A DNA stretch of 64,000 nucleotides from Asterias rubens (taxonomy: Eukaryota). Positions 1 to 61,088 of this stretch are shown here, one piece after another; within the stretch, counting starts at the first letter, position 1; each line of letters starts with the position of its first letter. Under the pieces are notes generated by a model. That model was not told the DNA's origin and ran no database searches. It was given only the letters and a program-made list of their open reading frames with translations. The translations under genes and the position numbers were made by a program. The stretch spans positions 30,876,001 to 30,940,000 of the forward strand of contig NC_047062.1 of assembly GCF_902459465.1 (NCBI RefSeq), given 5' to 3'.

Positions 1-2088
1 TCCCCTTTTATCTCATGCTTAGGCCCAAAGCTGCTCCCAGCCCCGGGTTCTTTGGTGAGTTTTGGTGTCGATTTTACAGGAACAGCTTCCTGTTTTGGTT
101 CTTCACGATGACGTCAGTCTTGGGTTTGACGGCGGTCAATTTGGAGCGCTATGTAGCCATCGTCCACCCACACAAATACAATACTATTTTCATCAAACGA
201 AACAAATACATCATGATTGTTGCGTGTTGGGTTTTGGCCGCAGTTTCAAGATCTTACTTCTTCTTTATCTATGAAGAAGATGAAGTCGTGGGATGTCATT
301 TCAAAGGCTGGTCTAGCGGAGGAGCTTAGGTGACATTCGGCTTGTACACGTTCACGGTCAACTTCTTCGCTCCTTTCATTGTGATGATCTTTGCGCAACT
401 GAAAGTTATCTCGACGTTGAACAGACAAGTGAAGATGGTAACTTCTCGAACAGGTTAGTTAAAAAGTCAGTTTTTCCGTTGCTTATTCTTTGTCGGTCCA
501 AACCATTTTTTCCAGTTTTGCAAAGGTCCCGCCAGTGGTTCTTTCACCATCCCGTTTATATCTCGTTCCGTTTATTTGTCTTCCCGTTCAGTTGATTTTG
601 TTTCTTTTCCGTATCGTTATAAGTCCCTTTTCAATGGTTCCTTTCCCGTATTTTCCCCCCAGCCACGTTCATTTCCCCTCTTTTTTTTTTTTTGGGGGGG
701 GGGGGGGGATTTTGGAGTTTGTTATTATTTTCTCGTCCCGTTTCCCCCGTTCTCTATCATTAATTTATTCCCGTCCCTGCGATTTTCCCCCGGCTGCGCG
801 CTTGTCGCATTGGAATTGTTCTTAGTTTTTTGCAAATCCCTGTGCTGCGGATCTTGATGGAGAAAACTTTTAAGGCGTGTTTCATTCAGTTTGTCATAAT
901 TTGCATTGAGGAGGGGGGGGGGGGTAACAAACTCCAAATATTCCCTTCCAGATCTCCTTAAACATGTTAGCGTAATTGTGTAATGTTTTTATTTTATTTT
1001 ATTGTCATTTGCTTCCTGGCATTTCCGAATTACAAAGAAAGGGAGACATTACAAAGGTTTGGGAGTAAATGTTCTCGTCCCTCCGCAATCACATACCATC
1101 CCCGTACCACCACTGTGTGACCCTTCCTCTCCCCGTCCCAAGTACTCTAACCCGCCACTCCGTGCCTACAGTCACCGTGATACCCCGTTTCGATTATTTT
1201 TTACTCCCGTTATTTTCCTGTCGAGTATAATTTATTATGACCTTTTCTTTGCTTTCGTTTCCCGTTTAACCCGTTTTCTTTGCTTTGCGTTCATATTTTA
1301 CCGTCCTATATAGTTACGCAGTAAGTCGGTCCAATCCATGTTTTCAGTTTCGCACGGGTCCCGCTAGCTATTTTCATAAAAACGCTTAGAAAAAACGTTC
1401 TGTGTGCGAGATATAGGTTTGTTCGTGGTACGAGCGACAAATATATCGACTGTGTGAGGCAATGATCAAAAGTGTTCAATGGTACAACGTATCAAAAGTG
1501 ACAACGTATTGCCGACTCCTCCTCTGAAGTGAAAAGTTGCATCAGACTGTTGATCTCTAACGGAAAAATCGAGCGATTCACAGGGTACAATACTTGTATC
1601 AATGGATACCTACAAACGGGAAAATTATGGTGGGTTTAGAGCCTACTGTACTATAGTATTTCTTGATTTTGCCTTTTCTTGCAGCCTCTTTGGGAGTAAA
1701 TCCAAGAGACCAGCGTGAAATGTGGCAGCTCCGAGCCTCCCAAACCCTGGTGAAGACACTCCTGGCCTGCGTCATCACATTCGGTGTGTGCTGGACTCCA
1801 AACCAAGTCTGGTACCTACTCTTCAATGTTGGTGTACCAATGGCTCCAGGTGGACCTTTCCAACACATCACTGTCATCTTAGCTGTTGGTAATTCCTGTG
1901 TGAATCCAGTCATTTTCACAATGACCAACAAGCCGTTCCGTAAAGGGATCAGGGAGCTGTTTTGTAAGCAGCGGGATTCGAACCAGGTGACTGACAGTAC
2001 TGTAGCGACTGGCACTGTATCCGAGACCGTCTCCAATGGCTCAACGCAAGGAGTTTTGGAACAACGGTTTCCATGTCGTTACGGTTAA
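1..2088 (+). pseudogene. Class A GPCR copy 1 (divergent type), 5'-truncated by window edge; exon 1 <1..453, exon 2 1685..2088; in-frame TAG at 327-329
   Basis: ERY motif and ECL2 Cys in exon 1; donor ACAG|GTTAGT at 453/454; acceptor TTGCAG|CC at 1684/1685; exon 2 has CWTP and NPVIF. GGA GCT TAG replaces GGA GCT CAG of the other copies. Flanking sequence looks error-rich, so the stop could be an artefact. Confidence 0.6.
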
Positions 2089-2808
2089 TACCCCTTGTAA
2101 GCACATTACAAAACCAACATGTAAAAATTCACCTCACCTAACTGGATAACAGAAACAATAACCTCACTTAACTGGATAACAGAAACAATAGCAATATTTT
2201 AAGGGTTCCGTGAGATAATTGCGAGCCGAACTCGTTCAATAAGTTTATGGGGTTTTGGGTTCACTGTCTGCTGCATGTTCATAAATAAACCGATTGCGCA
2301 CACAACGTTATGATTGTTAATACCCGAGATGGGTGTTGAAAACTGTCGCTGCGCAGTAAGAAGTGGGTGGACTCGTACACCGATGGAACTCAATCGAGTT
2401 TTTTTTTATTCGCATCACATTTGCAGTATCATAAATTCAGTATTCTTCCACAAAAGAGGTTTTTCTTTTGGGCTATGGTTAGCTAGATAGCGACACTCGC
2501 AGTGGACAGCTTGCAGCGCGTCCACGGTAATGTTTGCACTGTACAATTTTGGACAACAAAAGATATTGGCGTTCTCTGCATTGACGATTGAAAAAGATAT
2601 AAAATTAGTAAAATAATATCCAACAACTGTATATAAACTGCTGTCGTAGAGTTGCAGAAGGATATTCGTAAGTACTGTGGTGTGTCTTAATAAACGAGCT
2701 GAACAATTAGACGACAAAGAAAATTCAGCTGAAACCAACGAAAGATAAAAGTGAGTGAGGATATAAGACGTCAACAGTACCAGTCAAACTAAAGCCATTG
2801 TCTTTATC

Positions 2809-4892
2809 ATGGAGCAGCTCAACCTCTCAGAAGCATCAGTCAAAAGTACTGATGGAGACTCCCCAATGGAAGACACCGAAGGTTTCACCAAATTCACCTT
2901 AGCTCTCTACTGCATAATCTGCGTGGTTGGTATCACTGGTAACTTACTGGTTGCCATCGTACTCCTCCGTGTGCCGTCACTGAGGTCTAACACCAGTGAT
3001 TTCTTAGTGCATCTCTCCCTTGTAGATTTCATGGCCTGTGTTATGGTCATCCCAGCTTATCTTCTGCCTAATACCCACTCTCCTCCAAACCCCGGGTTCT
3101 TCGGTGAGTTTTGGTGTCGATTTTACACCAGCGGTTTCCTGTTTTGGTTCTTCACGATGACGTCAGTCTTGGGTTTGACTGTTGTCAATTTGGAGCGCTA
3201 TGTAGCCATCGTCCACCCACACAAATACAAGACTCTTTTCATCAAACGAAACAGATACATCATGATTGCTGCGTGTTGGGCTTCGGCTGCAGTTTTAGAT
3301 TCGTCTTCCTTTTTAACGCATGAAGAAGATGAAGTAGTGGGATGTCATTTTAAAGGCTGGTCCAACAGAGGAGCTCAGGCGACACTTGGCTTGTTTTCTT
3401 TCACCGGCAAGTTCTTTTTTCCATTCGCTGTTATGATTCTTGCTCAACTGAAAGTCATCTCTACGCTGAGCAGACAAGTGAAGATGCTAACTGCTCGAAC
3501 AGGTTAGTTAGAAAGTTATTATTTCACATTAACGAGAGCAAGAAAGTATCAACTGTTTTATTTTTCAAAGGACTCGGTGCATACCATTTGTTTTTCTTTT
3601 CTGATTTTTTTAATTTAAACTAGTTAATTATATTAGAGTAACTTTAATAGGGAATAAATTGACAATTCGTTTTCCCCTACTTTGACTTGAGCTATAGGCG
3701 TATTGGAATAAATGCAAAGCCACATCAATATTAAGAGATACACGTTTTAGCCTCTAAGCCCATAGACCAATACCAATGCGCAAGCGCAGACTGTTGAATG
3801 AGGTGCATTGTGGGATATATATGGATCAAATTTGGACACCAGCTAGACCACAATGCACCTAATTCCAAGCTTTACGCGCGCGCCCCGGTATTTGCGAAAA
3901 GGTCTGTGACCCAATGAAAACTGCTAGCACTCGACCCCGATGATCCACCCCCTGATCGTCTGCAGATTGAAGGAACACGTTGCCTTGGATCGGTCGAGTT
4001 GGTCTTTGAAAAGCGTTCTGTAAACCGTTTGTTCTAAAATCGATATGGTTAGAAAGATGTTGTAAAAGTAGAATACAATGATCTACACAAATATGCCTCG
4101 AAATTGCGTGGTTTTCTTTTCACCTCGTCGACTAACACGGTAATTTTGAGTGATACTTGTGTGAATCATTATTTTCTACTTTTAAAACATCTTTCTAACC
4201 ATATGCATTTCATAAACGGTTTCAAACGCTTTTTATACACCAACTCGTCCAATACAAGGCAACGTGTTCCTTTAAAGCAAAATCAGTTTGTTTTTGTTAC
4301 AATTACCTTATAGGGTAATTTCATTGAATCAATGCTGACAATTATGGAATTTTTGTTATGATAGACCGACTGTGGGGCATGCAGATACAAAAAGTTTGAT
4401 GATCCCTCTGATTTTAGTTCGACTGATCATGCCGTATCAAAATGGGTACCACGAAAACATGTAGATTTACCTCTTTTTAAGATCGAACCTAACGCGTTAG
4501 TTTGTATCGACTTTGCCTTTTCTACAGCCTCTATGGGAGTCAATCCAAGAGACCAGCGTGAAATGTGGCAGCTCCGAGCCTCCCAAACCCTGGTGAAGAC
4601 ACTCCTGGCCTGCGTCATCACATTCGGTGTGTGCTGGACTCCAAACCAAGTCTGGTTCCTGCTCTTCAATATTGGAGTTCATGTGACTCTAGGTGATCCT
4701 ATCCACCGTCTCACTGTCATCTTAGCCGTTGGTAATTCCTGTGTGAATCCAGTCATTTACACAATGACCAACAAGCCGTTCCGTAAAGGGATCAGGGAGC
4801 TGTTTTGTAAGCAGCGGGATTCGAACCAGGTGACTGACGGTGTAGCGACTGGCACTGTGTCTCAGACCGTCTCCAATACCCAAGAACAATAA
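2809..4892 (+). CDS. Class A GPCR copy 2 (chimeric: unique N-terminus, B-type body, A-type tail); exons 2809..3502 and 4528..4892, 352 aa
   Basis: 7TM motifs GN (TM1), LSLVD (TM2), C..ERY (TM3), CWTP (TM6), NPVIY (TM7); phase-1 GT-AG intron joins RT-G|CC-SMG in frame; 694+365 nt. Confidence 0.9.
3967..4275. mobile_element. Non-autonomous TIR element, Kolobok-like, in B-type intron (copies 10358..10669, 20370..20681, 29960..30275)
   Basis: TIR AGGAACACGTTGCCTTG / CAAGGCAACGTGTTCCT; flanks TTGA and TTAA; RR..YY termini. Confidence 0.7.
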
Positions 4893-5278
4893 GCGAGAAG
4901 AAGGTCACGATGGGGCCAACCATGCGAGGGGTATCGGGACAATGAGCATTTCACGAAATCACGGCAGCAACCCACTTTATGATTTTGTGTTTTGCACAAC
5001 TGTTTATACTGCATAATCATTGTGTATGTCGTGGATACTTTCGTAATGTACAGTTTCGATGAACTTGCTGAACAACTAAAGAAAACACGCGAATAAGACA
5101 AAAACCACGGATTGCGCTCCGTTTACGCAAAAACCCAAATGATCACGGTAATAAGACATCTTATAAGCGAATGCTCAGATAAACAAACGTTTTTTATCAC
5201 AATTATAGCACAACACGAGGTCAATGTCAAAACAAATTATTGTATTGTTAAGAGGTACATGGTTCAAGGGAGTTTTGA

Positions 5279-5651
5279 TTAAAGACACCGGACACTGTTG
5301 GTAATTGTCAAAGACCAGTCTTCTCACTTGGTGTCTCTCAACACTATGCATAAAATAACAAACCTGGGAAAATTTGAGCTCAATATTGGTCGTCGAAGTT
5401 GCGAGATAATAATGAAAGACAAAACACCCTTGTCACACGATGTTGTGTGCTTTCAGATTGAGTTAGAGAGCTCAAAATCTAATTCCGAGTTCTCGAAATC
5501 AAATTTGTTGAAAATTACTTCTGTCTCGAAAACTACGTCACTTCAGAGGGAGCAGTTTCTCACGATGTTTTATAAATTCAACCTTTCCCAAGGATTGTTG
5601 CTTATATACTTATTATTTTGAGTAATTGCCAATAGTGTCCACTGCCTTTAA
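5279..5651. mobile_element. Kolobok-like MITE in spacer S1 (copies 8318..8690, 18327..18699, 27902..28274)
   Basis: TTAA target duplication; imperfect TIR AGACACCGGACACTGTTGGTAATT / AATTGCCAATAGTGTCCACTGCCT; relatives at 47775, 49493 and 54820. Confidence 0.75.
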
Positions 5652-5919
5652 AACCTTTGGTGCGAGAACAAAAAACATTCCATGACAATATAACTCCCTT
5701 TTTCTTCTTCTGTTTTTCTTATATAAAAGATTATTAAGTTTTTACTACATAAATTTGTGTACAATAGTCGTGCACTCATGCTAAAAATCCCCCGGCCCCG
5801 AAAGAGCCATAAAAACCGCACGATTTATACTTAATAATGATATCAACTGTAAAGGTAACTTAACATCTCACTTTGGTTTTCAACTGAGTTGGTTGACGAA
5901 GAATTTCTATATCAGTCAC

Positions 5920-5927
5920 TGACGTCA
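5920..5927. promoter_or_regulatory. Perfect CRE palindrome TGACGTCA 228-231 bp upstream of GPCR ATGs (also 8959, 15928, 18968, 25516, 28543)
   Basis: ATCAGTCACTGACGTCAAAT is invariant in both A- and B-type upstream regions at a fixed distance; function is inferred only. Confidence 0.5.
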
Positions 5928-6147
5928 AATTATTCCACCGGCCTCTTGGCGGACGGATGCAAAGAGTGCAAATTTTCATATTTTGTTTTCATAGCAGGAG
6001 CAAAAAAGGCTGCAACTGAAAATTTCGTATGATAACGCATGAACTCATTTAATGAGTAGAGCTGAAAAATACCATACAGAATTCTTGTGAGAAGAAATTC
6101 CGTGACAAATATTTCAACTCAAGACACAAGCCATAAACTAAACCATC

Positions 6148-7931
6148 ATGGATCGATTTGAGAGTCTTCGCACGACTTTACCAACAGTTTTCCAAGAAGC
6201 AAATAGTGACGAGGATGTTGCAACGAAAGAAAGCGATGCGTTCACCAAGTTCGTCACATCTCTCTACTGCATAATCTGCGTGGTTGGTATCACTGGTAAC
6301 TTACTGGTTGCCATCGTACTCCTCCGTGTGCCGTCACTGAGGTCTAACACCAGTGATTTCTTAGTGCATCTCTCCCTTGTAGATTTCATGGCCTGTGTTA
6401 TGGTCATCCCAGCTTATCTTCTGCCTAATACCCACTCTCCTCCAAACCCCGGGTTCTTCGGTGAGTTTTGGTGTCGATTTTACACCAGCGGTTTCCTGTT
6501 TTGGTTCTTCACGATGACGTCAGTCTTGGGTTTGACTGTTGTCAATTTGGAGCGCTATGTAGCCATCGTCCACCCACACAAATACAAGATCATTTTCATC
6601 AAACGGAACAAATACATCATGATTGCTGCGTGTTGGGGTTGTTCCACACTTTCAAAATCTTACAATTGGTTTATATTTGAAGAAGATGAAGTAGTGGGAT
6701 GTCATTTTAAAGGCTGGTCTAACAGAGGAGCTCAGGCGGCATTTGGCTTGTTCACTTTTACGGTCCAATTCTTCGCTCCGTTCACAGTGATGATTTTTGC
6801 GCAGCTGAAAGTTATCTCGACGCTGAACAGACAAGTGAAGATGTTAGCTACTCGAACAGGTTAGTTAATCAGTCTTTACATATCTCAAGATTGACGAGAA
6901 ATTTAATGTATCAATATTTTCCGTTCTTCAATGGACTCAGTGCATACAATTTGTTTTTCTTTTTTGGGTATTCAGCAAATATCGTGTTATGCATCATACA
7001 TTGATACGATTTAGTTGTGGCTTACACCTACTCGTGTAATAGGCGCCTTTATAAAGCCGGCACCTTTAGAGAAGGCCAGGGTATACGTTTCCGTTCGTGC
7101 CATTGATGACCCGGCGAAAACTTTCGGCACTCGACCGCGATCCAACCGGTGGTTTAATAAATAATTTTAATTTAAATTTTTTTATTTTATAATAACCGTT
7201 ATAAGAAATTGCATTGAAGCGATTAAACTATTTATGACGACACACTGCTAAAACGAAAAAAAAATCAAATTTGTACACTAATTTCGGCCTTAACATTTAC
7301 ATCGGTGTTATTTCAATACCATTGTGGTGACTACTTTGATTCTTAATGATGTGACAACACAATTTGTGTAAATTGTAGCCGTCCAAGTTGATGGTGTAGA
7401 CTGACTGTGAGGCAATGATCTAAAGTATTTCGTTGCATTTTAGCGCTTCTGGACACAGTTGCGATGATCTTGAACGGCTTAGTACCGTACAACACACATT
7501 TGGAGATTTAACGGTGGTTGACTCGCACCTTATGTTTTATTTTGTGTCGACTGCATTCTCTTGCAGCCTCTTTGGGAGTAAATCCAATCAACCAGGATAA
7601 AATGTGGCAGCTCCGAGCCTCCCAAACCCTCGTGAAGACACTCCTGGCATGCGTCATCACATTCGGTGTGTGCTGGATTCCAAACCAAGTCTGGTTCCTG
7701 CTCTTTAACTTCGGTGTTCCATTAAATCTAGGTGGACCTGATCACCATCTCACTGTCATCTTAGCCGTTGGTAATTCCTGTGTGAATCCAGTCATTTACA
7801 CAATGACCAACAAGCCGTTCCGTAAAGGGATCAGGGAGCTGTTTTGTAAGCAGCGGGATTCGAACCAGGTGACTGACGGTGTAGCGACTGGCACTGTGTC
7901 TCAGACCGTCTCCAATACCCAAAAACAATAG
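6148..7931 (+). CDS. Class A GPCR copy 3 (chimeric: B-type head, A-type body); exons 6148..6859 and 7567..7931, 358 aa
   Basis: Same 7TM motifs; donor 6859/6860, acceptor TTGCAG at 7566; open frame throughout. Confidence 0.9.
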
Positions 7932-9186
7932 GCGAGAAGAAGGTCACGATGGGGCCAACCATGCGAGGGGTATCGGGACAATGAGCATTTCACGAAATTA
8001 CGGCAGCAACCCACTTTATGATTTTGTGTTTTGCACAACTGTTTATACTGCATAATCATTGTGTATGTCGTGGATACTTTCGTAATGTACAGTTTCGATG
8101 AACTTGCTGAACAACTAAAGAAAACACGCGAATAAGACAAAAACCACGGATTGCGCTCCGTTTACGCAAAAACCCAAATGATCACGGTAATAAGACATCT
8201 TGTAAGCGAATGCTCAGATAAACAAACGTTTTTTATCACAATTATAGCACAACACGAGGTCAATGTCAAAATAAATTATTGTATTGTTAAGAGGTACATG
8301 GTTCAAGGGAGTTTTGATTAAAGACACCGGACACTGTTGGTAATTGTCAAAGACCAGTCTTCTCACTTGGTGTCTCTCAACACTATGCATAAAATAACAA
8401 ACCTGTGAAAATTTGAGCTCAGTATTGGTCGTCGAAGTTGCGAGATAATAATGAAAGACAAAACACCCTTGTCACACGATGTTGTGTGCTTTCAGATTGA
8501 GTTAGAGAGCTCAAAATCTAATTCCGAGTTCTCGAAATCAAATTTGTTGAAAATTACTTCTGTCTCGAAAACTACGTCACTTCAGAGGGAGCAGTTTCTC
8601 ACAATGTTTTATAAATTCAACCTTTCCCAAGGATTGTTGCTTATATACTTATTATTTTGAGTAATTGCCAATAGTGTCCACTGCCTTTAAAACCTTTTGT
8701 GCGAGTACAAAAAACATTCCATGACAATATAACTCCCTTTTTCTTCTTCTGTTTTTCTTATATAAAAGATTATTAAGTTTTTACTACATAAATTTGTGTA
8801 CAATAGTCGTGCACTCATGCTAAAAATCCCCCGGCCCCGAAAGAGCCATAAAAACCGCACGATTTATACTTAATAATGATATCAACTGTAAAGGTAACTT
8901 AACATCTCACTTTGGTTTTCAACTGAGTTGGTTGACGAAGAATTTCTATATCAGTCACTGACGTCAAATTATTCCACCGGCCTCTTGGCGGACGGATGCA
9001 AAGAGTGCAAATTTTCATATTTTGTTTTCATAGCAGGAGCAAAAAAGGCTGCAACTGAAAATTTCGTATGATAACGCATGAACTCATTTAATGAGTAGAG
9101 CTGAAAAATACCATACAGAATTCTTGTGAGAAGAAATTCCGTGACAAATATTTCAACTCAAGACACAAGCCATAAACTAAACCATC

Positions 9187-25745: not shown

Positions 25746-27515
25746 ATGGATCAATTTGAGAGTCTTGGCACGACTTTATCAACAGTTTTCCAAGGAACAA
25801 AGAGTTCTGAGGAGGTTCCAATGGAAGACAACGATGCGTTTGCCAAGTTCATCTTATCTCTCTACTGCACGATCTGCGTGGTTGGTATCACAGGTAACTT
25901 ACTCGTTGCCATCGTACTCCTCCGTGTGCCGTCACTGCGGTCTAACACCAGTGATTTCTTGGTGCATCTCTCCCTTGTAGATTTCATGGCCTGTGTTCTG
26001 GTCATCCCAGCTTATCTTCTGCCTAATACCCACTCTCCTCCAAACCCCGGGTTCTTCGGTGAGTTTTGGTGTCGATTTTACACCAGCGGTTTCCTGTTTT
26101 GGTCCTTCGCGTTGACGTCAATCTTGGGTTTGACTGTTGTCAATTTGGAGCGCTATGTAGCCATCGTCCACCCACACAAATACAAGACCATTTTCATCAA
26201 ACGGAACAAATACATCATGATTGCTGCGTGTTGGGGTTGTTCCACACTTTCAAAATCTTACAATTGGTTTATATTTGAAGAAGATGAAGTAGTGGGATGT
26301 CATTTTAAAGGCTGGTCTAACAGAGGAGCTCAGGCGGCATTTGGCTTGTTCACTTTTACGGTCCAATTCTTCGCTCCGTTCACAGTGATGATTTTTGCGC
26401 AGCTGAAAGTTATCTCGACGCTGAACAGACAAGTGAAGATGTTAGCTACTCGAACAGGTTAGTTAATCAGTCTTTACATAAAATTATCTCAAGATTTACG
26501 AGAAATTTAATGTATCAATATTTTCCATTCTTTAATGGACTCAGTGCATACAATTTGTTTTTCTTTTTTGGGTATTCAGCAAATATCGTGTTATGCATCA
26601 TACATTGATACGATTTAGTTGTGGCTTACACCTACTCGTGTAATAGGCACCTTTATAAAGCCGGCACCTTTAGAGAAGGCCAGGGTATACGTTTCCGTTC
26701 GTGCCATTGATGACCCGGCGAAAACTTTCGGCACTCGACCGCGATCCAACCGGTGGTTTAATAAATAATTTTAATTTTAATTTTTTTATTTTATAATAAC
26801 CGTTATAAGAAATTGCATTGAAGCGATTAAACTATTTTTGACGACACACTGCTCAAACGAAAAAAAATCGGCCTTAACATTTACATCGGTGTTATTTCAA
26901 TACCATTGTGGTGACTACTTTGATTCTTAATGATGTGACAACACCATTTGTGTAAATTGTAGCCCCTCAAGTTGATGGTGTAGACTGACTGTGAGGCAAT
27001 GATCTAAAGTATTTCGTTGCATTTTAGCGCTTCTGGACACAGTTGCGATGATCTTGAACGGCTTAGTACCGTACAACACACATTTGAAGATTTAACGGTG
27101 GTTGACTCGCACCTTATGTTTTATTTTGTGTCGACTGCATTCTCTTGCAGCCTCTTTGGGAGTAAATCCAATCAACCAGGGTAAAATGTGGCAGCTCCGA
27201 GCCTCCCAAACCCTGGTGAAGACACTCCTGGCCTGCGTCATCACATTCGGTGTGTGCTGGACTCCAAACCAAGTCTGGTTCCTGCTCTTCAACTTCGGTG
27301 TTCCATTAAATCTAGGTGGACCTGATCGCCATCTCACTGTCATCTTAGCCGTTGGTAATTCCTGTGTGAATCCAGTCATTTACACAATGACCAACAAGCC
27401 GTTCCGTAAAGGGATCAGGGAGCTGTTTTGTAAGCAGCGGGATTCGAACCAGGTGACTGACGGTGTAGCGACTGGCACTGTGTCTCAGACCGTCTCCAAT
27501 ACCCAAGAACAATAG
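25746..27515 (+). CDS. Class A GPCR copy 7 (A type); exons 25746..26457 and 27151..27515, 358 aa
   Basis: 7TM motifs intact; canonical splice sites; exon-1 protein identical to copy 5. Confidence 0.9.
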
Positions 27516-28773
27516 GCGAGAAGAAGGTCACGATGGGGCCAACCATGCGAGGGGTATCGGGACAATGAGCATTTCACGAAATCACGGCAGCAACCCACTT
27601 TATGATTTTGTGTTTTGCACAACTGTTTATACTGCATAATCATTGTGTATGTCGTGGATACTTTCGTAATGTACAGTTTCGATGAACTTGCTGAACAACT
27701 AAAGAAAACACGCGAATAAGACAAAAACCACGGATTGCGCTCCGTTTACGCAAAAACCCAAATGATCACGGTAATAAGACATCTTGTAAGCGAATGCTCA
27801 GATAAACAAACGTTTTTTATCACAATTATAGCACAACACGAGGTCAATGTCAAAACAAATTATTGTATTGTTAAGAGGTACATGGTTCAAGGGAGTTTTG
27901 ATTAAAGACACCGGACACTGTTGGTAATTGTCAAAGACCAGTCTTCTCACTTGGTGTCTCTCAACACTATGCATAAAATAACAAACCTGTGAAAATTTGA
28001 GCTCAATATTGGTCGTCGAAGTTGCGAGATATGAATGAAAGACAAAACACCCTTGTCACACGATGTTGTGTGCTTTCAGATTGAGTTAGAGAGCTCAAAA
28101 TCTAATTCCGAGTTCTCGAAATCAAATTTGTTGAAAATTACTTCTGTCTCGAAAACCACGTCACTTCAGAGGGAGCAGTTTCTCACAATGTTTTATAAAT
28201 TCAACCTTTCCCAAGGATTGTTGCTTATATACTTATTATTTTGAGTAATTGCCAATAGTGTCCACTGCCTTTAAAACCTTTTGTGCGAGAACAAAAAACA
28301 TTCCATGACAACATAACTCCCTTTTTCTTCTTCTGTTTTTCCTTTATAAAAGATTATTAAATTTTTACTACATAAATTTGTGTACAATAGTCGTGCACTC
28401 ATGCTAAAAATCCCCCGGCTCCGAAAGAGCCATAAAAACCGCACGATTTATACTTAATAATGATATCAACTGTAAAGGTAACTTAACATCTCACTTTGGT
28501 TTTCAACTGAGTTGGTTGACGAAGAATTTCTATATCAGTCACTGACGTCAAATTATTCCACCGGCCTCTTGGCGGACGGATGCAAAGAGTGCAAATGTTC
28601 ATATTTTGTTTTCATAGCAGGAGCAGAGAAAAAGGCTGCAACTGAAAATTTCTTATGATAACGCGTGAACTCATTTAATGAGTAGAGCTGAAAAATACCA
28701 TACAGAATTCTTGTGAGAAGAAATTCCGTGACAAATATTTCAACTCAAGACACAAGCCATAAACTAAACCATC

Positions 28774-30888
28774 ATGGATCGATTTGAGAGTCTTCGCACG
28801 ACTTTACCAACAGTTTTCCAAGAACAGTTTTCCAAGAAGCAAATAGTGACGAGGATGTTGCAACGAAAGAAAGCGATGCGTTCACCAAGTTCGTCACATC
28901 TCTCTACTGCATAATCTGCGTGGTTGGTATCACTGGTAACTTACTGGTTGCCATCGTACTCCTCCGTGTGCCGTCACTGAGGTCTAATACCAGTGATTTC
29001 TTAGTGCATCTCTCCCTTGTAGATTTCATGGCCGGTGTTATGGTCATCCCAGCTTATCTTCTGCCTAATACCCACTCTCCTCCAAACCCCGGGTTCTTCG
29101 GTGAGTTTTGGTGTCGATTTTACACCAGCGGTTTCCTGTTTTGGTTCTTCACGATGACGTCAATCTTGGGTTTGACTGTTGTCAATTTGGAGCGCTATGT
29201 AGCCATCGTCCACCCACACAAATACAAGACTCTTTTCATCAAACGAAACAGATACATCATGATTGCTGCGTGTTGGGCTTCGGCTGCAGTTTTAGATTCG
29301 TCTCCCTTTTTAACGCACGAAGAAGATGAAGTAGTGGGATGTCCTTTTAAAGGCTGGTCCAACAGAGGAGCTCAGGCGACACTTGGCTTGTTTTCTTTCA
29401 CCGGCAAGTTCTTTGTTCCATTCGCTGTGATGATTCTTGCTCAAGTGAAAGTCATCTCTACGCTGAGCAGACAAGTGAAGATGCTAACTGCTCGAACAGG
29501 TTAGTTAGAAAGTTATTATTTCACGTTAACGAGAGCAAGAAAGTATCAACTGTTTTATTTTTCAAAGGACTCGGTGCATACCATTTGTTTTTCTTTTCTG
29601 ATTTTTTAATTTAAACTAGTTAATTATATTAGAGTAACTTTAATAGGGAATAAATTGACAATTCGTTTTCCCCTACTTTGACTTGTGCTATAGGCGTATT
29701 GGAATAAATGCAAAGCCACATCAATATTAAGAGATACACGTTTTAGCCTCTAAGCCCATAGACCAATACCAATGCGCAAGCGCAGACTGTTGAATGAGGT
29801 GCATTGTGGGATATATATGGATCAAATTTGGATACCAGCTAGACCACAATGCACCTAATTCCAAGCTTTACGCGCGCGCCCCGGTATTTGCGAAAAGGTC
29901 TATGACCCAATGAAAACTGCTAGCACTCGACCCCGATCCAACCCCTGATCGTCTGCAGATTGAAGGAACACGTTGCCTTGGATCGGTCGAGTTGGTCTTT
30001 GAAAAGCGTTCTGTAAACCGTTTGTTCTAAAATCGATATGGTTAGAAAGATGTTGTAAAAGTAGAATACAATGATCTACACAAAATAATATGCCTCGAAA
30101 TCGCGTGGTTTTCTTTTCACCTCGTCGACTAACACGGTAATTTTCAGTGATACTTGTGTGAATCATTATTTTCTACTTTTAAAACATCTTTCTAACCATA
30201 TGCATTTCATAACAAACGGTTTCAAACGCTTTTTATACACCAACTCGTCCGATACAAGGCAACGTGTTCCTTTAAAGCAAAAGCAGTTTGTTTTTGTTAC
30301 AATTACCTTATAGGGTAATTTCATTGAATCAATGCTGACAATTATGGAATTTTTGTTATGATAGACCGACTGTGGGGCAGATACAAAAAGTTTGATGATC
30401 CCTCTGATTTTAGTTCGACTGATCATGCCGTATCAATATGGGTACCACGAAAACATGTAGATTTACCTCTTCTTAAGATCGAACCTAACGCGTTAGTTTG
30501 TATCGACTTTGCCTTTTCTACAGCCTCTATGGGAGTCAATCCAAGAGACCAGCGTGAAATGTGGCAGCTCCGAGCCTCCCAAACCCTGGTGAAGACACTC
30601 CTGGCCTGCGTCATCACATTCGGTGTGTGCTGGACTCCAAACCAAGTCTGGTTCCTGCTCTTCAATATTGGAGTTCATGTGACTCTAGGTGATCCTATCC
30701 ACCGTCTCACTGTCATCTTAGCCGTTGGTAATTCCTGTGTGAATCCAGTCATTTACACAATGACCAACAAGCCGTTCCGTAAAGGGATCAGGGAGCTGTT
30801 TTGTAAGCAGCGGGATTCGAACCAGGTGGCTGACGGTGTAGTGACTGGCACTGTGTCTGAGACCGTCTCCAATGCCCAAGAACAATAG
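28774..30888 (+). pseudogene. Class A GPCR copy 8 (B type), frameshifted; exons 28774..29499 and 30524..30888
   Basis: 14-bp tandem duplication AACAGTTTTCCAAG (28809-28822, 28823-28836) shifts the frame and gives a TAA after 46 codons; further private changes MAC to MAG, GCH to GCP, QLK to QVK. Confidence 0.8.
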
Positions 30889-33800
30889 GAGAGAAGAAGA
30901 TCACGTTGGGAAACAAACAATAGAAAGTTGGAAAGTGGAAGTAATTTTACCTAGATGTGAACTTTCATCCTTTAGTAATTACATAGATTTTCAGCAAACA
31001 ATTTTTGTTATTATTACGGAACGTTCGCGGTAGCCGGATGTCAATTTTGTAAGTACGTTGAATGAAATGAAGTAAATATCATGGCATTGCACCGAAGTTT
31101 AAAGCAGTGTCACATTATTCAAGAATAGAGCATTGAGGGCGTTTCCGAGCAGCCGATTATGGGTGTTTTTTTTTAAGAAAAGGGGGCATTTATACATGGT
31201 GGTGTTGTAAAAAATAATATCCTTTACGTTGCAACAGATTAACATTGTTTTAAGCCATTGGACCCTTTCGGTAAACAGTGTTGTCCAAGGCCCACACTTT
31301 GTGTACCACAACTTCTATTTCAAATAACCAACCTGTGAAAATTTAGGCTCAATCGGTCATCGGAGTCGGGAGAAAACAACGGAAAATCCCACCCTTGTTT
31401 CCGCGCGTTTCGCCGTGTCATGACATGTGTTTAAAATAAATCCGTAATTCTGGTTAACGAGAATTTATATTGTTTTGCGGTTTTCTCAAAAGTAAAGCAT
31501 TTCATGGAATAATATTTCAAGAGAAGTCTTTCACCATTGCCATCTGTAAACCCTGTAAGTTATTTGTAAATCTGTGAACTTTTTTCTTTTTTTTCTGAAC
31601 CGAAAGGGTCCAATGGCTTTAATGCACCATGTTACATCCAGTTTAAGTTTAAGATAAAGTGCAAGTTTGTATTTAACATAAAACAATTGCCAACATTACA
31701 AACCGTCGATCACCTCATACATATTTCATACTGCAAGGTATGACCAAAAATTGTGTAATATAACAGTAAAAAATGTATCCAACAACAACACCGTCTAAAA
31801 TAAGAGGACCTGCGTTTGAGGGGAAGTATCAATTTGTTGTTAATTTAATGGTTTGTGTCTGTTAACTATTTCAAAATAATGTTTTTAATTGAATTTTAAA
31901 ACAGCTGACATCCTGTTTCCACTAAGCACATTACAACGAACAAAAAAAAATAATATTGATGATGCTGGGAAAACAGAAACAATTCGTTTTTCAAAATTTC
32001 TTGCACGATCATTATGCTCATTATTATTTTCCGATGCAGCAATTGAGTTGGATTTGCATGCAACGGTGTAAGTAAATCGCTCAATGTATAATTAACAAGT
32101 GTAAATCACAAATACAGGTGGTTAGCTACGTACACGAAGAGTGCCTATACGTACGCGAACACGGCTAAAATACCTGAGAAACTGTGAAACACACTTGACC
32201 CCGCTTTTGTTTTCGCAGGTTCTTCATTTTACGGTAAGCAGAACCGTTTAAAAAGTAGCCCTGTTGTGAACTCATCGGACGTTATTACTAAAATGAACAT
32301 TACAGGGTGTTAAGGCTAACAAACAGTTGCTGACAGTGTGAGCACTTGATATAATCCACCATTAATATACATAAACTGATGTTTGATATTGGGTCGGTAG
32401 AAATTGGATCAGCCATCTGATGGGTCACTAGAAAATAGTGAAAACCGATTACACATTATTATTTTGCGTTACATCGACTTAAACAAAATGAATAAAACGC
32501 TCACAGAGCGATAAACTCCAAACGGGAAATTGGTTGTGTTTGTTCCTCAACAAACAATGACATTTCAGACAGAAATATTGCAAGTGATGTTTTCTACTAT
32601 CATCATCATTAGACCGTGTAAGTTTTATGTAAATCTGTAACATTTTTTTCTCCGTAAAGTTCCTTAATTGATTGTAGGTAGGGTGTTGTGAAACGCTTTT
32701 GCATCCGTTTCTTTTTATTCAAATCGATCAGTTGCCTTGTCGATTAGGAAATAAATTAATATAAGTAAAGAGTCAATGGTGACCTTTGTATCATTCGAAG
32801 AGAGTTGAAGGAAGAATACACAGAGTACGTTACTGCTCTGTTCTTTCTTATCAATCACTTAACCCTCTAGTCCCTGCATGCCACCGCCCGAGTTTCTGAA
32901 AACCAATTTTTCAAGATTCTTGCAGTAAACAACTGGAATCGTAATTCAATTTTTAAAAGATAGCTTAATACATAATATGCACAATTTGTTAACCTTTCTG
33001 TAATGTTTGTATAAAAGTACAAGCTCCCATTGGGAACAATAATCGGCTCTCGAATATTTGTTTGTAAAGATTATTTCATTGAAGCATGACGATGAAATAA
33101 TTTAGCTCATACCAATTAGCAAACACAACGGAAACTGTATTTTATTCATCATTAATATTGATATTGTCGAAAACTAACGCCTTCGCATTTAATTAGTTCG
33201 AGCATTGAGTCAGATAAAAGCCTTGAAAAGCTATTGTGTCCATTTTATCCTTACAAAAAAATATTCGAGAGCCGATTATTGTTCCCAATGGGAGCTTGTA
33301 CTTTTATACAAACATTACCGAAAGGGTAAAAAAATGTGCATAAAATTTATTAAGCTATCTTTTAAAAATTGAACTACGATTCCAGTTGTTTACTGCAAGA
33401 ATCTTGAAAAATTGGTTTTCAGAAACTCGGGTGGTGCTTTTAATGAAACAAACCGTAAAGGAAAAGACGTCTGCATTCAGCCTGGTTCGATTTAAAAATC
33501 TGGGAGACCTACATTTTACAAGGACTGCCAAATTATTATAAGTAATCACAACAAATTGTATAGGCCTACACGTGAATTCTTTTTTAGATTGCGAAGCAGC
33601 GAAGGGGAATAATGTAAAGGTCATGAACAGGTACTGGACATGAACAGATGCTGACCATTATGAAACAGAGTCTCTGCCAGTAAGGTATTCACCCGACCCA
33701 TATACTTTCACTTATTTTTGTATTTTGGGAGTCATGGCGTACATACACAAAAACGATCTGTTTGATTTTGTACGCACTCCGAGATCCACGTAAGGTTATT

Positions 33801-36800
33801 ATTGTGGTTTTAAGGCATATAGGGTCCACAGTCCACACACGCAAGTACAGAGCGTTTGGAATAATAAGGCCAGATACACGACATGGGCCCCTAAAATGGT
33901 CATTGCTTGAAACGGTCCAGGAAGGTTCATTAGGATTATACAAAATTACCAGTAGGACTATACAAGCACAGGAATGTAATTTGGTGTGCTCTAACTAATT
34001 GAATTCCAAGATTAGCTGTTTGTAGCAATTCAACAATAATGTATTGAGGAAACCCACAAAACCTCAATATTGATAACATAAAAGACATTCTCCTTGCCAA
34101 TGACAATAAAGTAAATACCAACATTCCTGCTGCGCAGCCAATACTAATACAAATGACGCCCTCTTGTGTTGCGCCAAACACCTGTGCGGTGACGTATGGT
34201 TTTGATTGGTCCGTAGTGCCGGTATGCAGGTGTCGCGCTTGCGCATTGTCCTTGCCGTGCGTTAAACTCTTTTCTTCGACGAAAAAGTGACAAATAAATT
34301 GTGTGTGTGCTTTTTCGCTTGTTTGTGCATATATCAATCATGGACTGCATGGTGGTCGAGTTTGAACTTTACTTTGACTTCACAACGAGACGCATCACGC
34401 CACAGACAGAGGTGGGGGTGTTTTCACTCTAACTAGTGAGCCTCACCATGTAGGTTTTCTTCCTACATAGTCTCATGAGAAATGTAGTTAAAACAAATAA
34501 TAATATAGGCCTAAGCCTAATAAAAAACAAAGCAAACGGACTTAAATTAAATAATTAGGTTCAGGGGCCCACGTACGCTTTGTTTACGTGACAAACATGA
34601 CAAACATTGTTAATAAAAAATTCGCACCAAGCAAGTTCACAAGGGAATTAACATTTTCACTACTAACTGTTCAAATCATATGCCCGACATTAAGATTATG
34701 TTTGACTTACCCCGACCATAAGTTTTGCAAGGGAGATGAGCTCAGTTTATTCAACCATCTTCAACTCCTCGCACATTTCCACACTTTTTAAATGTCGTGC
34801 GTGGCGAAAAAAACGCCCGCCCTCTGTAGATCTAAAATGGTAAGTGCAATAGTCTGGGGCATCATACAAGTACGTAAAGTACATACATTCTGTTAAGGAA
34901 CCAGACTGTATAGTTGCTATTTATGGCAGTATGTTATTGGTCAATTTATTGAACACACCCTATTATAAGCGCATAATTTTGACCAATGAAATTAGGTTTA
35001 AGAAATCATTTAGGTAAGAGGTAAATGTACATCTCTGCTAACGATTGTGTCGACTGCATGCAATCAATGCATCACCTTGCAACACGGCCTTCATAATAAA
35101 TATCAAAATGTTCAAAATAATAACTGTTTGCAAGTGTTCCTTCAAGCAAATAAAGTATTCGAGACGTTCGCCATGGGCATTGATGATGAGCAGACAGCTG
35201 GCTACTGCACAGAACCAGAATAAGGTAAGCAACCAACCAATTACCAACCAAAGATTTCGTTTTTGAATGAATTGTCATGATTGTGTGGAACTGGAAACTA
35301 AAAATCACCGAAATAACAAGGCTATTTTGATATTAAAATTTATAAAATAAATTAAAAAGAAAGGGATACATCTCATGTCATATTATTATTGAGTCAAAAT
35401 TGCTGTGCTCTTTTTAAAATTTGTATTGTATTTATAAATATTAAGAATTATTAGTAAATAGTATAGGAAAACAGCGGTACTCTTGAAATTTATGTGGAAG
35501 TTGTGGCAACAACTGTTTTATTATAAATAATGCCCAATAATTAATAGTAATACATGGCCAGTCCCTGCCATGCCAGTGCCAATGTAATATTTGTCTGCAT
35601 GATGGACTCTACAAAAAATACAACGCAGTATCAAGCGAGCCGCCGCTGGTGGCGCGCTTCGCGATATGCTTTTTGGCGTAGCGTTTTTGTGACCGAAGTA
35701 CTCACATCCGGGAACTCGCAAACATGCAACCTGAAACTCGCCGATAGCTTTCTGCAGGGTGTCTGCGGATTGATCTTGTTTTCTGCAGAATGTGAACCGG
35801 TTATCAGCTGGTGGAGGCCATCTTGGTTTCATTCATAAATATTGCCGTTGTCTACGAAAAAAAATCCCGATGATGAAAGTTTTTTCAAGACTTACAGGCT
35901 TGGTTAAAACTGCATTTTTCTGCCGATCGCGTCAGTTTTGGTTGCCCAACTTTGACATAAAAAACGATGCAGTGGATGGTCTCGACGTAGCTTGAAACCT
36001 AAAGAAACAGATGCACCATAGGTTTGTTTTCCTAGATACATCAATCACTGCTGTGTGAAAAGTGTCCCAGGTTGAAATTTTGGGCCCCGACGATGCCCGG
36101 TGTGTGCGGTCGGGGACGAAAACACCGCGGAAAACTGGACGAATCCGGCGTCAATCAGGGTAAGTAGAATTTCTTTATTTCAGCATTTAAATGATTAAGA
36201 ACAAGACTAAACTTATTTTTAAAGATTTGTTTACGTAATTTAAACATTTTTATGTGAAATTTAGAGATACATTTTAGTAAACAATTTTAAAATATCATTT
36301 AAGGCTTCCCATCATATTAATGGAATAGTCCAAGTTTATGCTCAAGGTTTACGCCGAATTTTCCAAAGTGGACCATTCCATTATAGTAAATAGGGGATAT
36401 ATAATGAAGTGGTAAATAATGCAGTAAATTAGAATCGTGCTGATCAGAATTGATGAATATCAGGATGATTGAGAAACTTTTCTTCACTGTTGGTATTCTT
36501 AAACGATTTTTTGCACCAAAATGCTTTAAAAAATACAAATCTTCCAGATAATAATTTTGTAGAAGATTTTTTTTTTTTTTTTTTTTTTGAGACTGAGGGG
36601 GGGGGGGTTATTTTATTGTATAATGTATTCGATTTTGGCAGGTACATTAACTTCTTTTTTCTCTACTCTGTCTGTTTATTTAGAAACACAAGTACAACAC
36701 ATACTACAATAATTTTTAATATTTTTTTATTTAACAATTTGCAGCCTTCAAATCGGAAATTCAACTTCATGTGGAGACTTTGCCACACATGGGAAAACAA

Positions 36801-61022: not shown

Positions 61023-61088
61023 TCAAAATCTGTTAAAATTTATATGTTTTGGTTGATATTGTCAATTCTTTCCTCAACAGATGAAAAT

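What the first reader, a model, noticed from the sequence alone, without database searches (positions are those of the whole stretch)
1..35148. Young tandem array of eight orphan peptide-receptor-like GPCRs organised as an AB dimer
Seen: eight same-strand two-exon GPCRs with one phase-1 intron after TM5, in the order copy1 - chimera - S1 - chimera - S1 - B - S2 - A - S1 - B - S2 - A - S1 - B(pseudo) - truncated S2. Units are nearly identical, including introns and TE insertions. The array probably continues left of base 1. Established: class A motifs are present, TM7 has no opsin Lys (Val at 7.43) and TM3 has no aminergic Asp; echinoderms are known to carry lineage-specific rhodopsin-type GPCR expansions proposed as chemoreceptors. 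Inference: this is an actively expanding chemosensory or peptide-sensing receptor cluster caught mid birth-and-death.
Basis: partly seen in the sequence, partly recalled or inferred. Interest (0 to 1): 0.8.

Follow-up and report, generated by a model that had tools for sequence, protein, structure and literature searches.

The report
Young tandem GPCR array in starfish
This is a real cluster of eight nearly identical orphan receptor genes in the common starfish (Asterias rubens) that has duplicated, recombined and partly decayed since the split from its Pacific sister species, which makes it a clear but ordinary example of how lineage-specific receptor families evolve.

Summary
Window 1-35240 (Asterias rubens chromosome C1:30876001-) carries eight same-strand, two-exon class A GPCR genes. 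Each has a phase-1 GT-AG intron between TM5 and TM6. Three ~9.6-kb A-S1-B-S2 units differ by only 0.6-1.0% in substitutions and share their introns and transposon insertions.

- The array does not continue to the left.
- Copy 1 has an in-frame TAG in this assembly, but two independent metagenome contigs read it as Gln.
- Copy 8 is frameshifted by a 14-bp duplication.
- Copies 4 and 6 carry suspect lesions.

The syntenic Asterias amurensis locus shows that A-S1-B-S2 existed before the species split (~5% non-coding divergence). A. rubens then amplified the AB unit three times. A. amurensis amplified A alone three times and deleted most of B. Both chimeras are real, and the g2/S1/g3 junction was recovered at 99.7% in an independent assembly.

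A is under purifying selection (omega 0.18-0.40). The B copies change at a neutral ratio.

The family is orphan and is expanded only in asteroids. It has no one-to-one orthology to any named receptor.

A chemosensory role is untested: two RNA-seq runs gave zero exon reads. Copy number could not be checked by read depth.

RefSeq already annotates these genes, and first readers flagged two other GPCR arrays elsewhere in this genome. This is a new member of a known kind.

The parts
1..2088 (+). g1, the oldest copy. Exon 1 runs from 252 bp left of the window to 453, the intron is 454-1684, and exon 2 is 1685-2088. In this assembly it is a pseudogene allele, with an in-frame TAG at 327-329, a 1-aa deletion in TM1/ICL1 and NPxxY changed to NPxxF.
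   Evidence: Independent metagenome contig L007 matches 1-571 at 99.65% and encodes Gln in place of the stop.
2809..4892 (+). g2, an intact chimera of 352 aa (exons 2809-3502 and 4528-4892). It has its own ancestral head of about 25 codons. From nt 2884 on, the body, intron and exon 2 are 98% identical to B. RefSeq XP_033632030.
   Evidence: The A. amurensis g2 ortholog has the same head but a non-B body that is frameshifted.
4893..6147 (+). S1 spacer, copy a. Its last ~420 bp form the B-type upstream region.
   Evidence: 4497-6963 aligns to 7537-9993 at 95%. Independent contig L006 spans 4542-7276 at 99.74% without gaps.
6148..7931 (+). g3, an intact B-head/A-body recombinant of 358 aa (exons 6148-6859 and 7567-7931). 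The crossover lies between codons ~128 and ~147. RefSeq XP_033632146.
   Evidence: (113 of the 192 U1-U2 substitutions fall in the first 1000 columns).
7932..9186 (+). S1 spacer, copy b.
9187..11286 (+). g4, B type, 357 aa (exons 9187-9895 and 10922-11286). The frame is open, but one Val is deleted just before ERY in TM3 and there is a Trp-to-Leu change in outer TM6. RefSeq XP_033632262.
   Evidence: (P0004 is identical).
11287..16157 (+). S2 spacer, copy a, including the U1/U2 junction (S2 homology ends near 15630 and the A upstream region starts near 15684).
16158..17940 (+). g5, A type, intact, 358 aa (exons 16158-16869 and 17576-17940). RefSeq XP_033632380.
17941..19195 (+). S1 spacer, copy c. 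It contains a very abundant, transcribed short repeat at 18216-18797.
   Evidence: Independent contig L005 spans 17747-20377 at 99.2%.
19196..21297 (+). g6, B type, 358 aa, open frame (exons 19196-19907 and 20933-21297). The near-invariant Pro6.50 of CWxP is replaced by Gln. There is a repeat insertion at 20156-20737 in the intron. RefSeq XP_033632481.
21298..25745 (+). S2 spacer, copy b. It holds two dispersed repeats (~21645-22046 and a foldback at ~23282-23860) that all three units share. The U2/U3 junction near 25271 lacks ~390-445 bp that are present at the U1/U2 junction.
25746..27515 (+). g7, A type, intact, 358 aa (exons 25746-26457 and 27151-27515).
27516..28773 (+). S1 spacer, copy d.
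28774..30888 (+). g8, a B-type pseudogene. A 14-bp tandem duplication at about 28809-28822 shifts the frame after codon ~17. The invariant Cys83 is changed to Gly, and there are five further private amino-acid changes. Exon 2 is 30524-30888.
30889..35240 (+). S2 spacer, copy c. This is the ancestral copy, and it runs into the single-copy flank that is syntenic with A. amurensis.
   Evidence: (33438-35240 aligns to L002 15708-17539).

Best explanation
What it is. This is a genuine, recently amplified tandem array of orphan class A GPCR genes on Asterias rubens chromosome C1, evolving by birth-and-death.

Shown:
1. Two old paralogs, A and B, already sat side by side as A-S1-B-S2 before A. rubens and A. 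amurensis split. Next to them were two older copies, g1 and g2. In unconverted segments, synonymous differences per site (pS) between A and B reach 0.36-0.64.
2. In A. rubens the whole ~9.6-kb AB unit now stands three times. The unit copies differ by 0.6-1.0%, which is 1/5 to 1/8 of the interspecies divergence.
3. In A. amurensis the A gene alone was amplified three times on a different 4.4-5-kb unit, and B was reduced to a 5' fragment.
4. Recombination between non-allelic copies made two intact chimeras: g2 (own head, B body) and g3 (B head, A body).
5. Gene conversion keeps 100-nt tracts of A and B identical.
6. Decay is visible. g1 has a nonsense allele that independent contigs read as Gln. 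g8 has a 14-bp frameshift. g4 has lost a Val before ERY. g6 has P6.50Q.
7. A is under purifying selection. The B copies accumulate changes at the neutral ratio.

Inferred:
- Unit gain and the chimeras arose by unequal crossing-over between the repeated units.
- The proteins work as ordinary G-protein-coupled receptors, because all activation motifs are intact in g2, g3, g5 and g7.
- The A/B differences lie in the N-terminus, the outer halves of TM3-TM6 and ECL3. This suggests different ligands with the same coupling interface.

The ligand class is unknown. I put about 40% on an external chemical cue (a chemoreceptor in the sense of the starfish ApOR and sea-urchin surreal-GPCR candidates). I put about 35% on an endogenous peptide or small-molecule signal. 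The rest is undecided.
For: Gene models, splice sites and motifs.

Unit structure and divergence.

Species identity and existing annotation: P0004 (RefSeq XP_033632262, A. rubens) is identical to the g4 product. Five array genes have RefSeq models.

Array limits.

A. amurensis synteny: the locus holds a g1 ortholog, a frameshifted g2, three A genes, then S1 plus the first ~310 bp of B exon 1 (92% to window 18782-19505), then the end of S2 (91%), then COA8 and photolyase.

Tree: A and B form one clade (97/99), the B clade is supported at 100/98, and the three A. amurensis A genes are monophyletic (94/98). The clade is nested in an Asterias-only radiation (100/99).

Selection:
- A orthologs have dS 0.05-0.076 and omega 0.18-0.40.
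- A versus B gives omega ~0.6.
- Among B copies N:S is 13:5, against a neutral expectation of about 3.3:1.
- Within the A clade N:S is 34:32.

Gene conversion: identical A-B tracts of 105 and 102 nt, permutation P ~0.0008, with patchy pS ranging from 0 to 0.64.

Independent assemblies:
- L006 reproduces the g2-exon2/S1/g3 junction at 99.74% with no gap.
- L005 reproduces an A-exon2/S1/B-exon1 junction at 99.2%.
- L004 encodes a further mosaic, B with an A-type TM3 patch.
- L007 carries g1 without the stop.

Contigs of a second DNA run of different study and organism code (X4) carry U3-specific variants.
Against: Copy number was not verified by reads. Only Logan contigs were served for DNA runs, and their depths are not copy numbers. 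The depths rise with assembled copy number: 165 for 2-copy, 206-248 for 3-copy and 413-571 for 4-copy segments. No single-copy baseline was available.

Unit-to-unit divergence (0.6-1.0%) is of the same order as the heterozygosity reported for the sister species (0.96%, PMC11090083). Some inflation by haplotypes is therefore not formally excluded.

No expression was seen. Two RNA-seq runs (about 23 million records read) gave zero reads on A or B exons at 95% likeness or more. That covers every A and B copy. The tissues are unknown to me.

The difference in N:S between the B and A clades is not statistically significant on these counts.

Concerted evolution could mimic youth.
Confidence: 0.78

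Rival explanations
1. Assembly over-expansion. There are really one or two AB units, and allelic haplotypes were laid in tandem by the long-read assembler.
For: Unit divergence of 0.6-1.0% is close to the heterozygosity published for the sister species (0.96%). No read-depth or spanning-read test was possible. DNA contigs of the best holder look like a majority consensus of the copies.
Against: There are three units, not two, in gap-free sequence.

The assembly holds three distinct B sequences plus the g2 body, each with private lesions. If the assembly derives from one diploid individual, one locus can supply at most two.

The two unit junctions differ by a ~390-445-bp indel.

U1 differs structurally, with a B-type head and upstream region. 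Its g2/S1/g3 junction is reproduced in an independent assembly.

Contig depths rise with assembled copy number.

The independently assembled sister genome also shows a threefold amplification at this locus.
Confidence: 0.1
2. This is an old three-unit array kept similar by concerted evolution (gene conversion), not by recent duplication.
For: Gene conversion clearly operates here. It shows in the identical A-B tracts, the g2 body overwritten by B, and the mosaics found in other individuals.
Against: Similarity is uniform over the whole 9.6 kb, including non-coding spacers and repeat insertions. Conversion tracts between A and B are only ~100 nt long.

The sister species has a different unit (A only, with an unrelated 2.3-kb spacer) and a single B remnant next to the ancestral S2 end. 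Under this rival, that would require several parallel losses.
Confidence: 0.1
3. Functional rival. The receptors serve endogenous signalling (a lineage-specific neuropeptide, hormone or metabolite), not detection of environmental chemicals.
For: The best solved-structure matches include galanin, somatostatin, CCK and neuromedin-U receptors. The intracellular loops and helix 8 are very conserved across about 30 paralogs. A is under purifying selection between species. The only family member listed among the Acanthaster ApORs is a conserved one-to-one ortholog outside the expansion.
Against: Matches to peptide receptors are no better than those to beta-adrenergic or histamine receptors, at 25-30% identity.

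Rapid species-specific gain, loss and pseudogenisation in tandem arrays is the pattern of environmental receptor families. It is not the pattern of neuropeptide receptors, which are usually single-copy and conserved (established knowledge; PMC5442662).
Confidence: 0.35
4. The whole cluster is transcriptionally dead and decaying. The open frames are simply too young to have broken.
For: Two RNA-seq runs gave zero exon reads. Four of the eight copies carry a stop, a frameshift or a lesion at a conserved site. The B copies change at the neutral N:S ratio.
Against: A orthologs show omega 0.18-0.40 across the species split, for example 11 non-synonymous against 18 synonymous changes where sites stand about 3.3:1. 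A was independently amplified and kept intact in both species. g2, g3, g5 and g7 keep every invariant family position.
Confidence: 0.08

Closest known systems
Acanthaster planci putative olfactory receptors (ApORs; Roberts et al. 2017, PMC5442662) and the sea-urchin surreal-GPCRs cited there
   Same: Both are echinoderm rhodopsin-type (7tm_1) GPCRs that expanded in particular lineages and sit in tandem arrays. Members within an array are each other's closest relatives. ApOR13 (oki.13.89 / gbr.78.45) is the Acanthaster protein P0074, which belongs to the same wider family.
   Different: ApOR13 lies in an early-branching clade with one-to-one orthologs, not in the Asterias expansion. None of the closer Acanthaster homologs carry the family's ICL1 motif among the 63 ApOR sequences. 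ApORs were defined by expression in sensory organs, and no expression was detected here. This family also has a conserved phase-1 intron in ICL3.
Named peptide receptors used in the automatic RefSeq names (galanin R1-like, neuropeptide F-like, somatostatin R5-like, moody-like, octopamine beta-2R-like)
   Same: The class A fold and motifs are shared. GALR1 and SSTR4 are the top solved-structure hits (E 6e-24 and 1e-21).
   Different: Identity is about 25-30%, and the scores are not separable from those of beta-2 adrenergic, CCK-A, histamine H2 receptors or rhodopsin. The five array genes carry three different names. Strong family members are found only in Asteroidea, with one sea-urchin and one hemichordate relative. 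This is not orthology.
Vertebrate chemoreceptor arrays (OR, TAAR, V1R) and the primate red/green opsin array, as models of birth-and-death with unequal crossing-over (established knowledge)
   Same: Shared features are tandem same-strand copies, species-specific copy-number change, pseudogenes, hybrid genes made by recombination within the coding region, and gene-conversion tracts.
   Different: The gene family is unrelated. Here the repeating unit is a two-gene (A+B) module. The two members have opposite fates: A is conserved, and B is decaying or deleted.

Membership tests
Class A (rhodopsin-like) GPCR, Pfam PF00001 7tm_1 | Significant match to the 7tm_1 profile across TM1-TM7 | tested here: met
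   Exon 1 scores 96-97 bits (profile positions 1-187) and exon 2 scores 41-43 bits (positions 186-260). The cut-off is 30.5.
Class A (rhodopsin-like) GPCR, Pfam PF00001 7tm_1 | Microswitch motifs N1.50, D2.50, E/DRY, W4.50, P5.50, CWxP and NPxxY, plus the TM3-ECL2 cysteine pair | tested here: met
   Read directly from the models. Family-invariant columns include N51, D79, C109, R136, W163, C185, P211, C273, W274, N311, P312 and Y315. g2, g3, g5 and g7 keep all of them. g6 has P6.50Q, g1 has NPxxF and g8 has C83G.
Class A (rhodopsin-like) GPCR, Pfam PF00001 7tm_1 | Ligand-dependent G-protein signalling | not testable with these tools
   This needs heterologous expression and a signalling assay.
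Opsins | Retinal-binding Lys at 7.43 | tested here: not met
   Counting back from P7.50 in the NPVIY motif gives Val at 7.43 in every copy.
Biogenic amine receptors | Asp at 3.32 in TM3 | tested here: not met
   There is no Asp anywhere between the TM3 Cys and ERY in any copy. The RefSeq name 'octopamine receptor beta-2R-like' is therefore not supported.
Conserved bilaterian neuropeptide receptor orthogroups (galanin/allatostatin-A, somatostatin, NPF/NPY, QRFP, and so on) | One-to-one or few-to-few orthology, with markedly better similarity to one orthogroup than to others | tested here: not met
   many receptor types fall within E 1e-24 to 1e-17; profile scores are 480 bits or more only in Asteroidea, 373 bits for one S. 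purpuratus protein, 205 bits for Saccoglossus and 129 bits or less for any named receptor; about 29 loci in A. rubens are at least 50% identical.
Echinoderm candidate chemoreceptor GPCRs (ApOR / surreal-GPCR type) | Lineage-specific expansion arranged in tandem arrays | tested here: met
   Searches show an Asterias-only radiation (100/99) with several small clusters on C1, C2 and C44. Searches also apply. This matches the criteria used in PMC5442662.
Echinoderm candidate chemoreceptor GPCRs (ApOR / surreal-GPCR type) | Expression in sensory organs (tube feet, terminal tentacle) | tested here: inconclusive
   two RNA-seq runs of the species gave zero reads on A or B exons, but the tissue is unknown. 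No tissue-resolved data could be reached.
Birth-and-death multigene family | Species-specific gains, pseudogenes and losses at an orthologous locus | tested here: met

The most novel reading that the evidence does not exclude
The same receptor locus was amplified threefold, independently and on different repeat units, in two sister starfish species. A. rubens amplified AB and A. amurensis amplified A alone, and both kept A intact and constrained. This could reflect recurrent selection for dosage or allelic diversity of the A receptor, tied to species-specific chemical ecology such as prey, predator or spawning cues. B would then be a dispensable passenger. If so, the A type would be a tractable entry point for pairing a starfish chemoreceptor with its ligand.
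Probability: 0.15. Interest if true: 0.6.

Novelty: new member of a known kind. Interest (0 to 1): 0.3.

Why it matters
Tandem, lineage-specific class A GPCR expansions are already the accepted picture for echinoderm candidate chemoreceptors. These genes are already in RefSeq under inconsistent automatic names. The existence of the array is therefore not news.

What the locus offers is an unusually readable snapshot. The sister-species comparison fixes the ancestral state (g1, g2, A-S1-B-S2). It dates the amplification to well after the split. It also shows every step of birth-and-death in 35 kb: unit amplification, two recombinant genes, conversion tracts, a nonsense allele that independent contigs read as Gln, a frameshift, and opposite fates for the two members of the unit.

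It corrects the RefSeq names, since these are not octopamine, galanin or moody receptors. It also singles out the A type (g5, g7 and the A. amurensis trio) as the copy worth trying to match to a ligand.

Tried and rejected
Read-depth and copy-number test. Both run searches and the single read-laying run were used. DNA runs were served only as Logan contigs, so there is no usable depth baseline and no spanning reads. The test remains open.

Expression. Two raw RNA-seq runs were laid on 15500-21300. All reads fell on two very abundant repeats and none on exons. This is negative but not decisive.

Opsin and aminergic readings were rejected on the defining residues.

Orthology to galanin, somatostatin, NPF, octopamine or moody receptors was rejected.

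'Array continues to the left' was rejected.

I looked for these proteins or their accession numbers in the literature and found none. I searched the sequence supplements of the two Acanthaster chemoreceptor papers for the family's ICL1 motif. Only ApOR13 appeared in the 2017 set, and nothing appeared in the 2018 set.

Positive selection between A and B: segment-wise pN/pS is about 1 or below, except in the N-terminus (0.186/0.137, on small counts). There is no claim of positive selection.

The minus-strand ORFs in S2 (for example 24357-24773) have no Pfam match and lie in array-specific sequence. They were not pursued.

Structure prediction, complex prediction and the representative-protein search were not run. 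They would not have changed any conclusion.

Full report
1. WHAT IS IN THE SEQUENCE

The window is G000:C1:30876001-30940000 and contains no N. The product of the fourth gene is identical to RefSeq XP_033632262 of Asterias rubens, so the organism is the common starfish.

ORF listing and splice-site inspection give eight same-strand genes. All share one architecture:
- Exon 1 encodes the N-terminus to TM5 and ends ...ACAG|GTTAG.
- Exon 2 begins after ...CAG| with CC, so the intron is phase 1 and lies in ICL3.
- Introns are about 700 bp in A-type genes and about 1025 bp in B-type genes.

Both exons hit Pfam 7tm_1 (96-97 and 41-43 bits against a cut-off of 30.5). All class A microswitches can be read directly.

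2. ANATOMY OF THE ARRAY

Self-BLAST and a three-way alignment define three units: U1 ~5724-15683, U2 ~15684-25270 and U3 ~25271-35160. Each unit is A-S1-B-S2.
- Identity is 96.4-98.3% when indels are counted.
- Substitution-only divergence is 0.6% (U1-U2), 0.8% (U2-U3) and 1.0% (U1-U3) outside the first ~1 kb of U1.
- There are no large indels, so introns and the two dispersed repeats in S2 are shared. Those repeats are at ~21645-22046 and ~23282-23860, each with hundreds of 95-98% copies elsewhere in the genome. They predate the amplification.
- The two unit junctions start the next unit at the same point, but the U2/U3 junction lacks ~390-445 bp that are present at U1/U2.

In front of the units lie g1 and g2.

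- The array does not continue to the left. Only 253 bp of g1 exon 1 lie beyond base 1. The next relative is a 51%-identical two-exon paralog on the opposite strand, 5.4 kb away.
- g1 carries an in-frame TAG (327-329), a one-residue deletion and NPxxF. It is a pseudogene in this assembly.
- Two independent metagenome assemblies encode the same g1 exon with Gln at that codon. L007 matches at 99.65%. The null is therefore polymorphic or private to the reference.
- g8 is disabled by a 14-bp tandem duplication at ~28809-28822. It also has Gly at an invariant Cys.
- g4 lacks one Val immediately before ERY. g6 has Gln at the near-invariant Pro6.50.
- Only g2, g3, g5 and g7 keep every conserved family position.

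4. THE SISTER SPECIES FIXES THE HISTORY

The best named hit, P0001 of A. amurensis, led to the syntenic locus (L001 and L002). BLAST against the window and ORF inspection show the following order there:
- a g1 ortholog;
- a g2 ortholog with the same head but a different body, frameshifted in TM3;
- three intact A genes 4.4-5 kb apart, whose spacer is unrelated to S1 or S2;
- S1 followed by only the first ~310 bp of B exon 1 (92% to window 18782-19505);
- a deletion;
- the end of S2 (91% to 33438-35240);
- COA8 and a photolyase gene, as in window 37.6-46 kb.

So A-S1-B-S2 predates the species split. Orthologous non-coding divergence is about 5% (4.1-5.4%), while the A. rubens units differ by 0.6-1.0%. 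The AB amplification is therefore about 1/5 to 1/8 as old as the split.

The absolute age depends on the date used. PMC11090083 gives ~28 Mya, which puts the amplification at ~3-6 My. My recollection of a ~3.5 Mya trans-Arctic split would put it at ~0.4-0.7 My. I could not confirm that date in the library.

A. amurensis amplified A alone (intron divergence 1.0%, dS 0.03-0.05) and lost B. In the protein tree:
- A plus B form one clade (97/99).
- B is supported at 100/98.
- The three A. amurensis A genes group together (94/98).

5. RECOMBINATION AND CONVERSION

- g3 has the B upstream region and the B head up to about codon 128, then the A body.
- g2 keeps its ancestral head (89% to the A. amurensis g2 head). 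From nt 2884 on it is 98% B, including the intron.
- The g2-exon2/S1/g3 stretch (4542-7276) is reproduced at 99.74% without gaps in an independent metagenome contig, L006. The match to any other copy is 95.7% or less. The chimera and its position are therefore real.
- L005 reproduces an A-exon2/S1/B-exon1 junction at 99.2%.
- L004 encodes yet another mosaic, B with an A-type TM3 patch.
- Between A and B, synonymous difference is patchy. pS is 0 in ECL1, outer TM3, outer TM6 and the C-tail, but 0.36-0.64 in TM4, outer TM5 and ECL3.
- The two longest identical A-B tracts (105 and 102 nt) exceed permutation expectation (P ~0.0008).

A and B are therefore old paralogs that have been partly homogenised by short conversion tracts.

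6. SELECTION

- A orthologs: dS 0.05-0.076, dN 0.013-0.020, omega 0.18-0.40.
- A versus B: omega ~0.6.
- Private changes among the four B bodies stand at 13 non-synonymous to 5 synonymous, which is the neutral ratio. In the A clade the counts are 34:32.
- The contrast is suggestive but not significant.

Amino-acid differences between A and B sit in the N-terminus, in TM3 (3.34, 3.36, 3.37, 3.40), in outer TM4 (4.51-4.61 and beyond), in TM5 (5.37-5.49), in ICL3 and in ECL3. TM1, TM2, ICL1, ICL2, TM7 and helix 8 are almost unchanged. This fits different ligands with a common coupling interface. That reading is an inference.

7. WHAT FAMILY

- Solved structures give only generic class A similarity: GALR1 6e-24, SSTR4 and beta-2 adrenergic 1e-21, and CCK-A, NMU, H2 and rhodopsin down to 1e-17.
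- A profile of 18 members finds scores of 480 bits or more only in Asterias, Patiria and Acanthaster. It also finds one S. purpuratus protein (373 bits, 37%), one Saccoglossus protein (205 bits), and then unrelated receptors at 129 bits or less. The search's sensitivity is limited to sequences that share short words with the query.
- A. rubens has about 29 loci at 50% identity or more, mostly on C1 and in several small clusters.
- The array clade sits in an Asterias-only radiation (100/99).
- RefSeq calls five of the array genes galanin R1-like (twice), octopamine beta-2R-like (twice) and moody-like. None of these names is supported.
- First readers of this scan flagged two other GPCR arrays in the same genome (I did not check them). 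Such arrays are evidently common in this genome.

8. FUNCTION

The published frame is the Acanthaster ApOR work (PMC5442662). It treats tandemly arrayed rhodopsin-type GPCRs expressed in tube feet and sensory tentacles as olfactory candidates.

One of its 63 sequences, ApOR13 (oki.13.89), is the Acanthaster protein P0074. In my tree it lies in a conserved early-branching clade with one-to-one orthologs, not in the expansion. The link is therefore weak.

Direct evidence here is negative but thin. Two 2026 RNA-seq runs carrying the same species label were laid on 15500-21300 at 95% likeness or more (about 23 million records read). They gave zero reads on g5 or g6 exons. At that threshold, this also covers all other A and B bodies. 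Thousands of reads fell on two very abundant repeats, at 18216-18797 and 20156-20737. The tissues are unknown to me, and chemoreceptors are typically expressed at low levels in few cells.

9. IS THE COPY NUMBER REAL?

DNA runs were available only as Logan contigs.

Indirect evidence favours a real array:
- The sequence is gap-free.
- There are three units rather than two.
- There are three different B sequences plus the g2 body. If the assembly derives from one diploid individual (I did not verify this), that is more than one locus can supply.
- The two unit junctions are structurally different.
- One junction is independently confirmed.
- Variants specific to U3 appear in the contigs of a second DNA run with a different study and organism code.
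- Contig depths rise with assembled copy number, at 165, 206-248 and 413-571 for 2-, 3- and 4-copy segments. The tool warns that these are not copy numbers.

Against this, unit divergence is no larger than the heterozygosity reported for the sister species (0.96%). I leave about 10% for some over-expansion.

10. VERDICT

The birth-and-death reading is well supported and is sharpened by the sister-species comparison. The chemosensory reading remains a reasonable but untested guess. The kind of system is well known in echinoderms and the genes are already annotated, so interest is modest.

Noticed in passing
window 18216-18797 and 20156-20737: Two short repeats lie inside the array, one in S1 and one in the B intron. 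They are extremely abundant in DNA contigs and heavily represented in both RNA-seq runs (depth ~700-2300). The first shows opposite-strand joints (18393<->18672), as in a foldback or MITE-like element. All RNA reads on the laid stretch came from these repeats.
   Followed up: partly
window ~23282-23860 (also ~13270-13850 and ~32860-33440): This is a foldback-type dispersed repeat with many 98%-identical copies across the genome. At several other loci it stands in head-to-tail arrays with a 1074-bp period (for example G000:C7:8625928-8628777, C2:13354521-13357370 and C10:14087329-14090192).
   Followed up: no
window 53369-53868: This is a minisatellite with a 43-bp period (self-matches offset by 43 and 85 bp at ~95%). 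An earlier first-reader note (s1-150138) reads it as repeated splice acceptors in MRPS18A. I did not examine it.
   Followed up: no
window 37628-46000: The right flank is single-copy and syntenic with A. amurensis. It holds a COA8 gene region (~37.6-40.3 kb) and a DNA photolyase/cryptochrome gene on the minus strand (FAD_binding_7 hit in ORF 42656-43120). Window 35240-37628 has no counterpart in the A. amurensis locus.
   Followed up: partly
window -7855..-5658 (L003 2146-4343), minus strand: This is a divergently oriented two-exon paralog of the same family, 51% identical to A, with the same intron position. It appears intact and sits head-to-head with g1.
   Followed up: partly
L002 11229-11966 (A. 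amurensis): The intron of the third A. amurensis A gene (P0052) contains an extra partial copy of the first part of S1. The gene's C-terminus differs from those of its neighbours. This suggests a further rearrangement (a fused or deleted unit) in that species.
   Followed up: no
L001 197-1255 and 5399-5623 (A. amurensis g1 ortholog): The exon 1 frame is open, but there is Val-to-Glu next to D2.50 and an extra Ile. The exon 2 frame ends early in helix 8. No RefSeq protein corresponds to it. g1 may be decaying in both species.
   Followed up: no
window 61044-61649: This is a 201-aa ORF with a weak NUDIX match (E 0.0014, below the Pfam cut-off).
   Followed up: no
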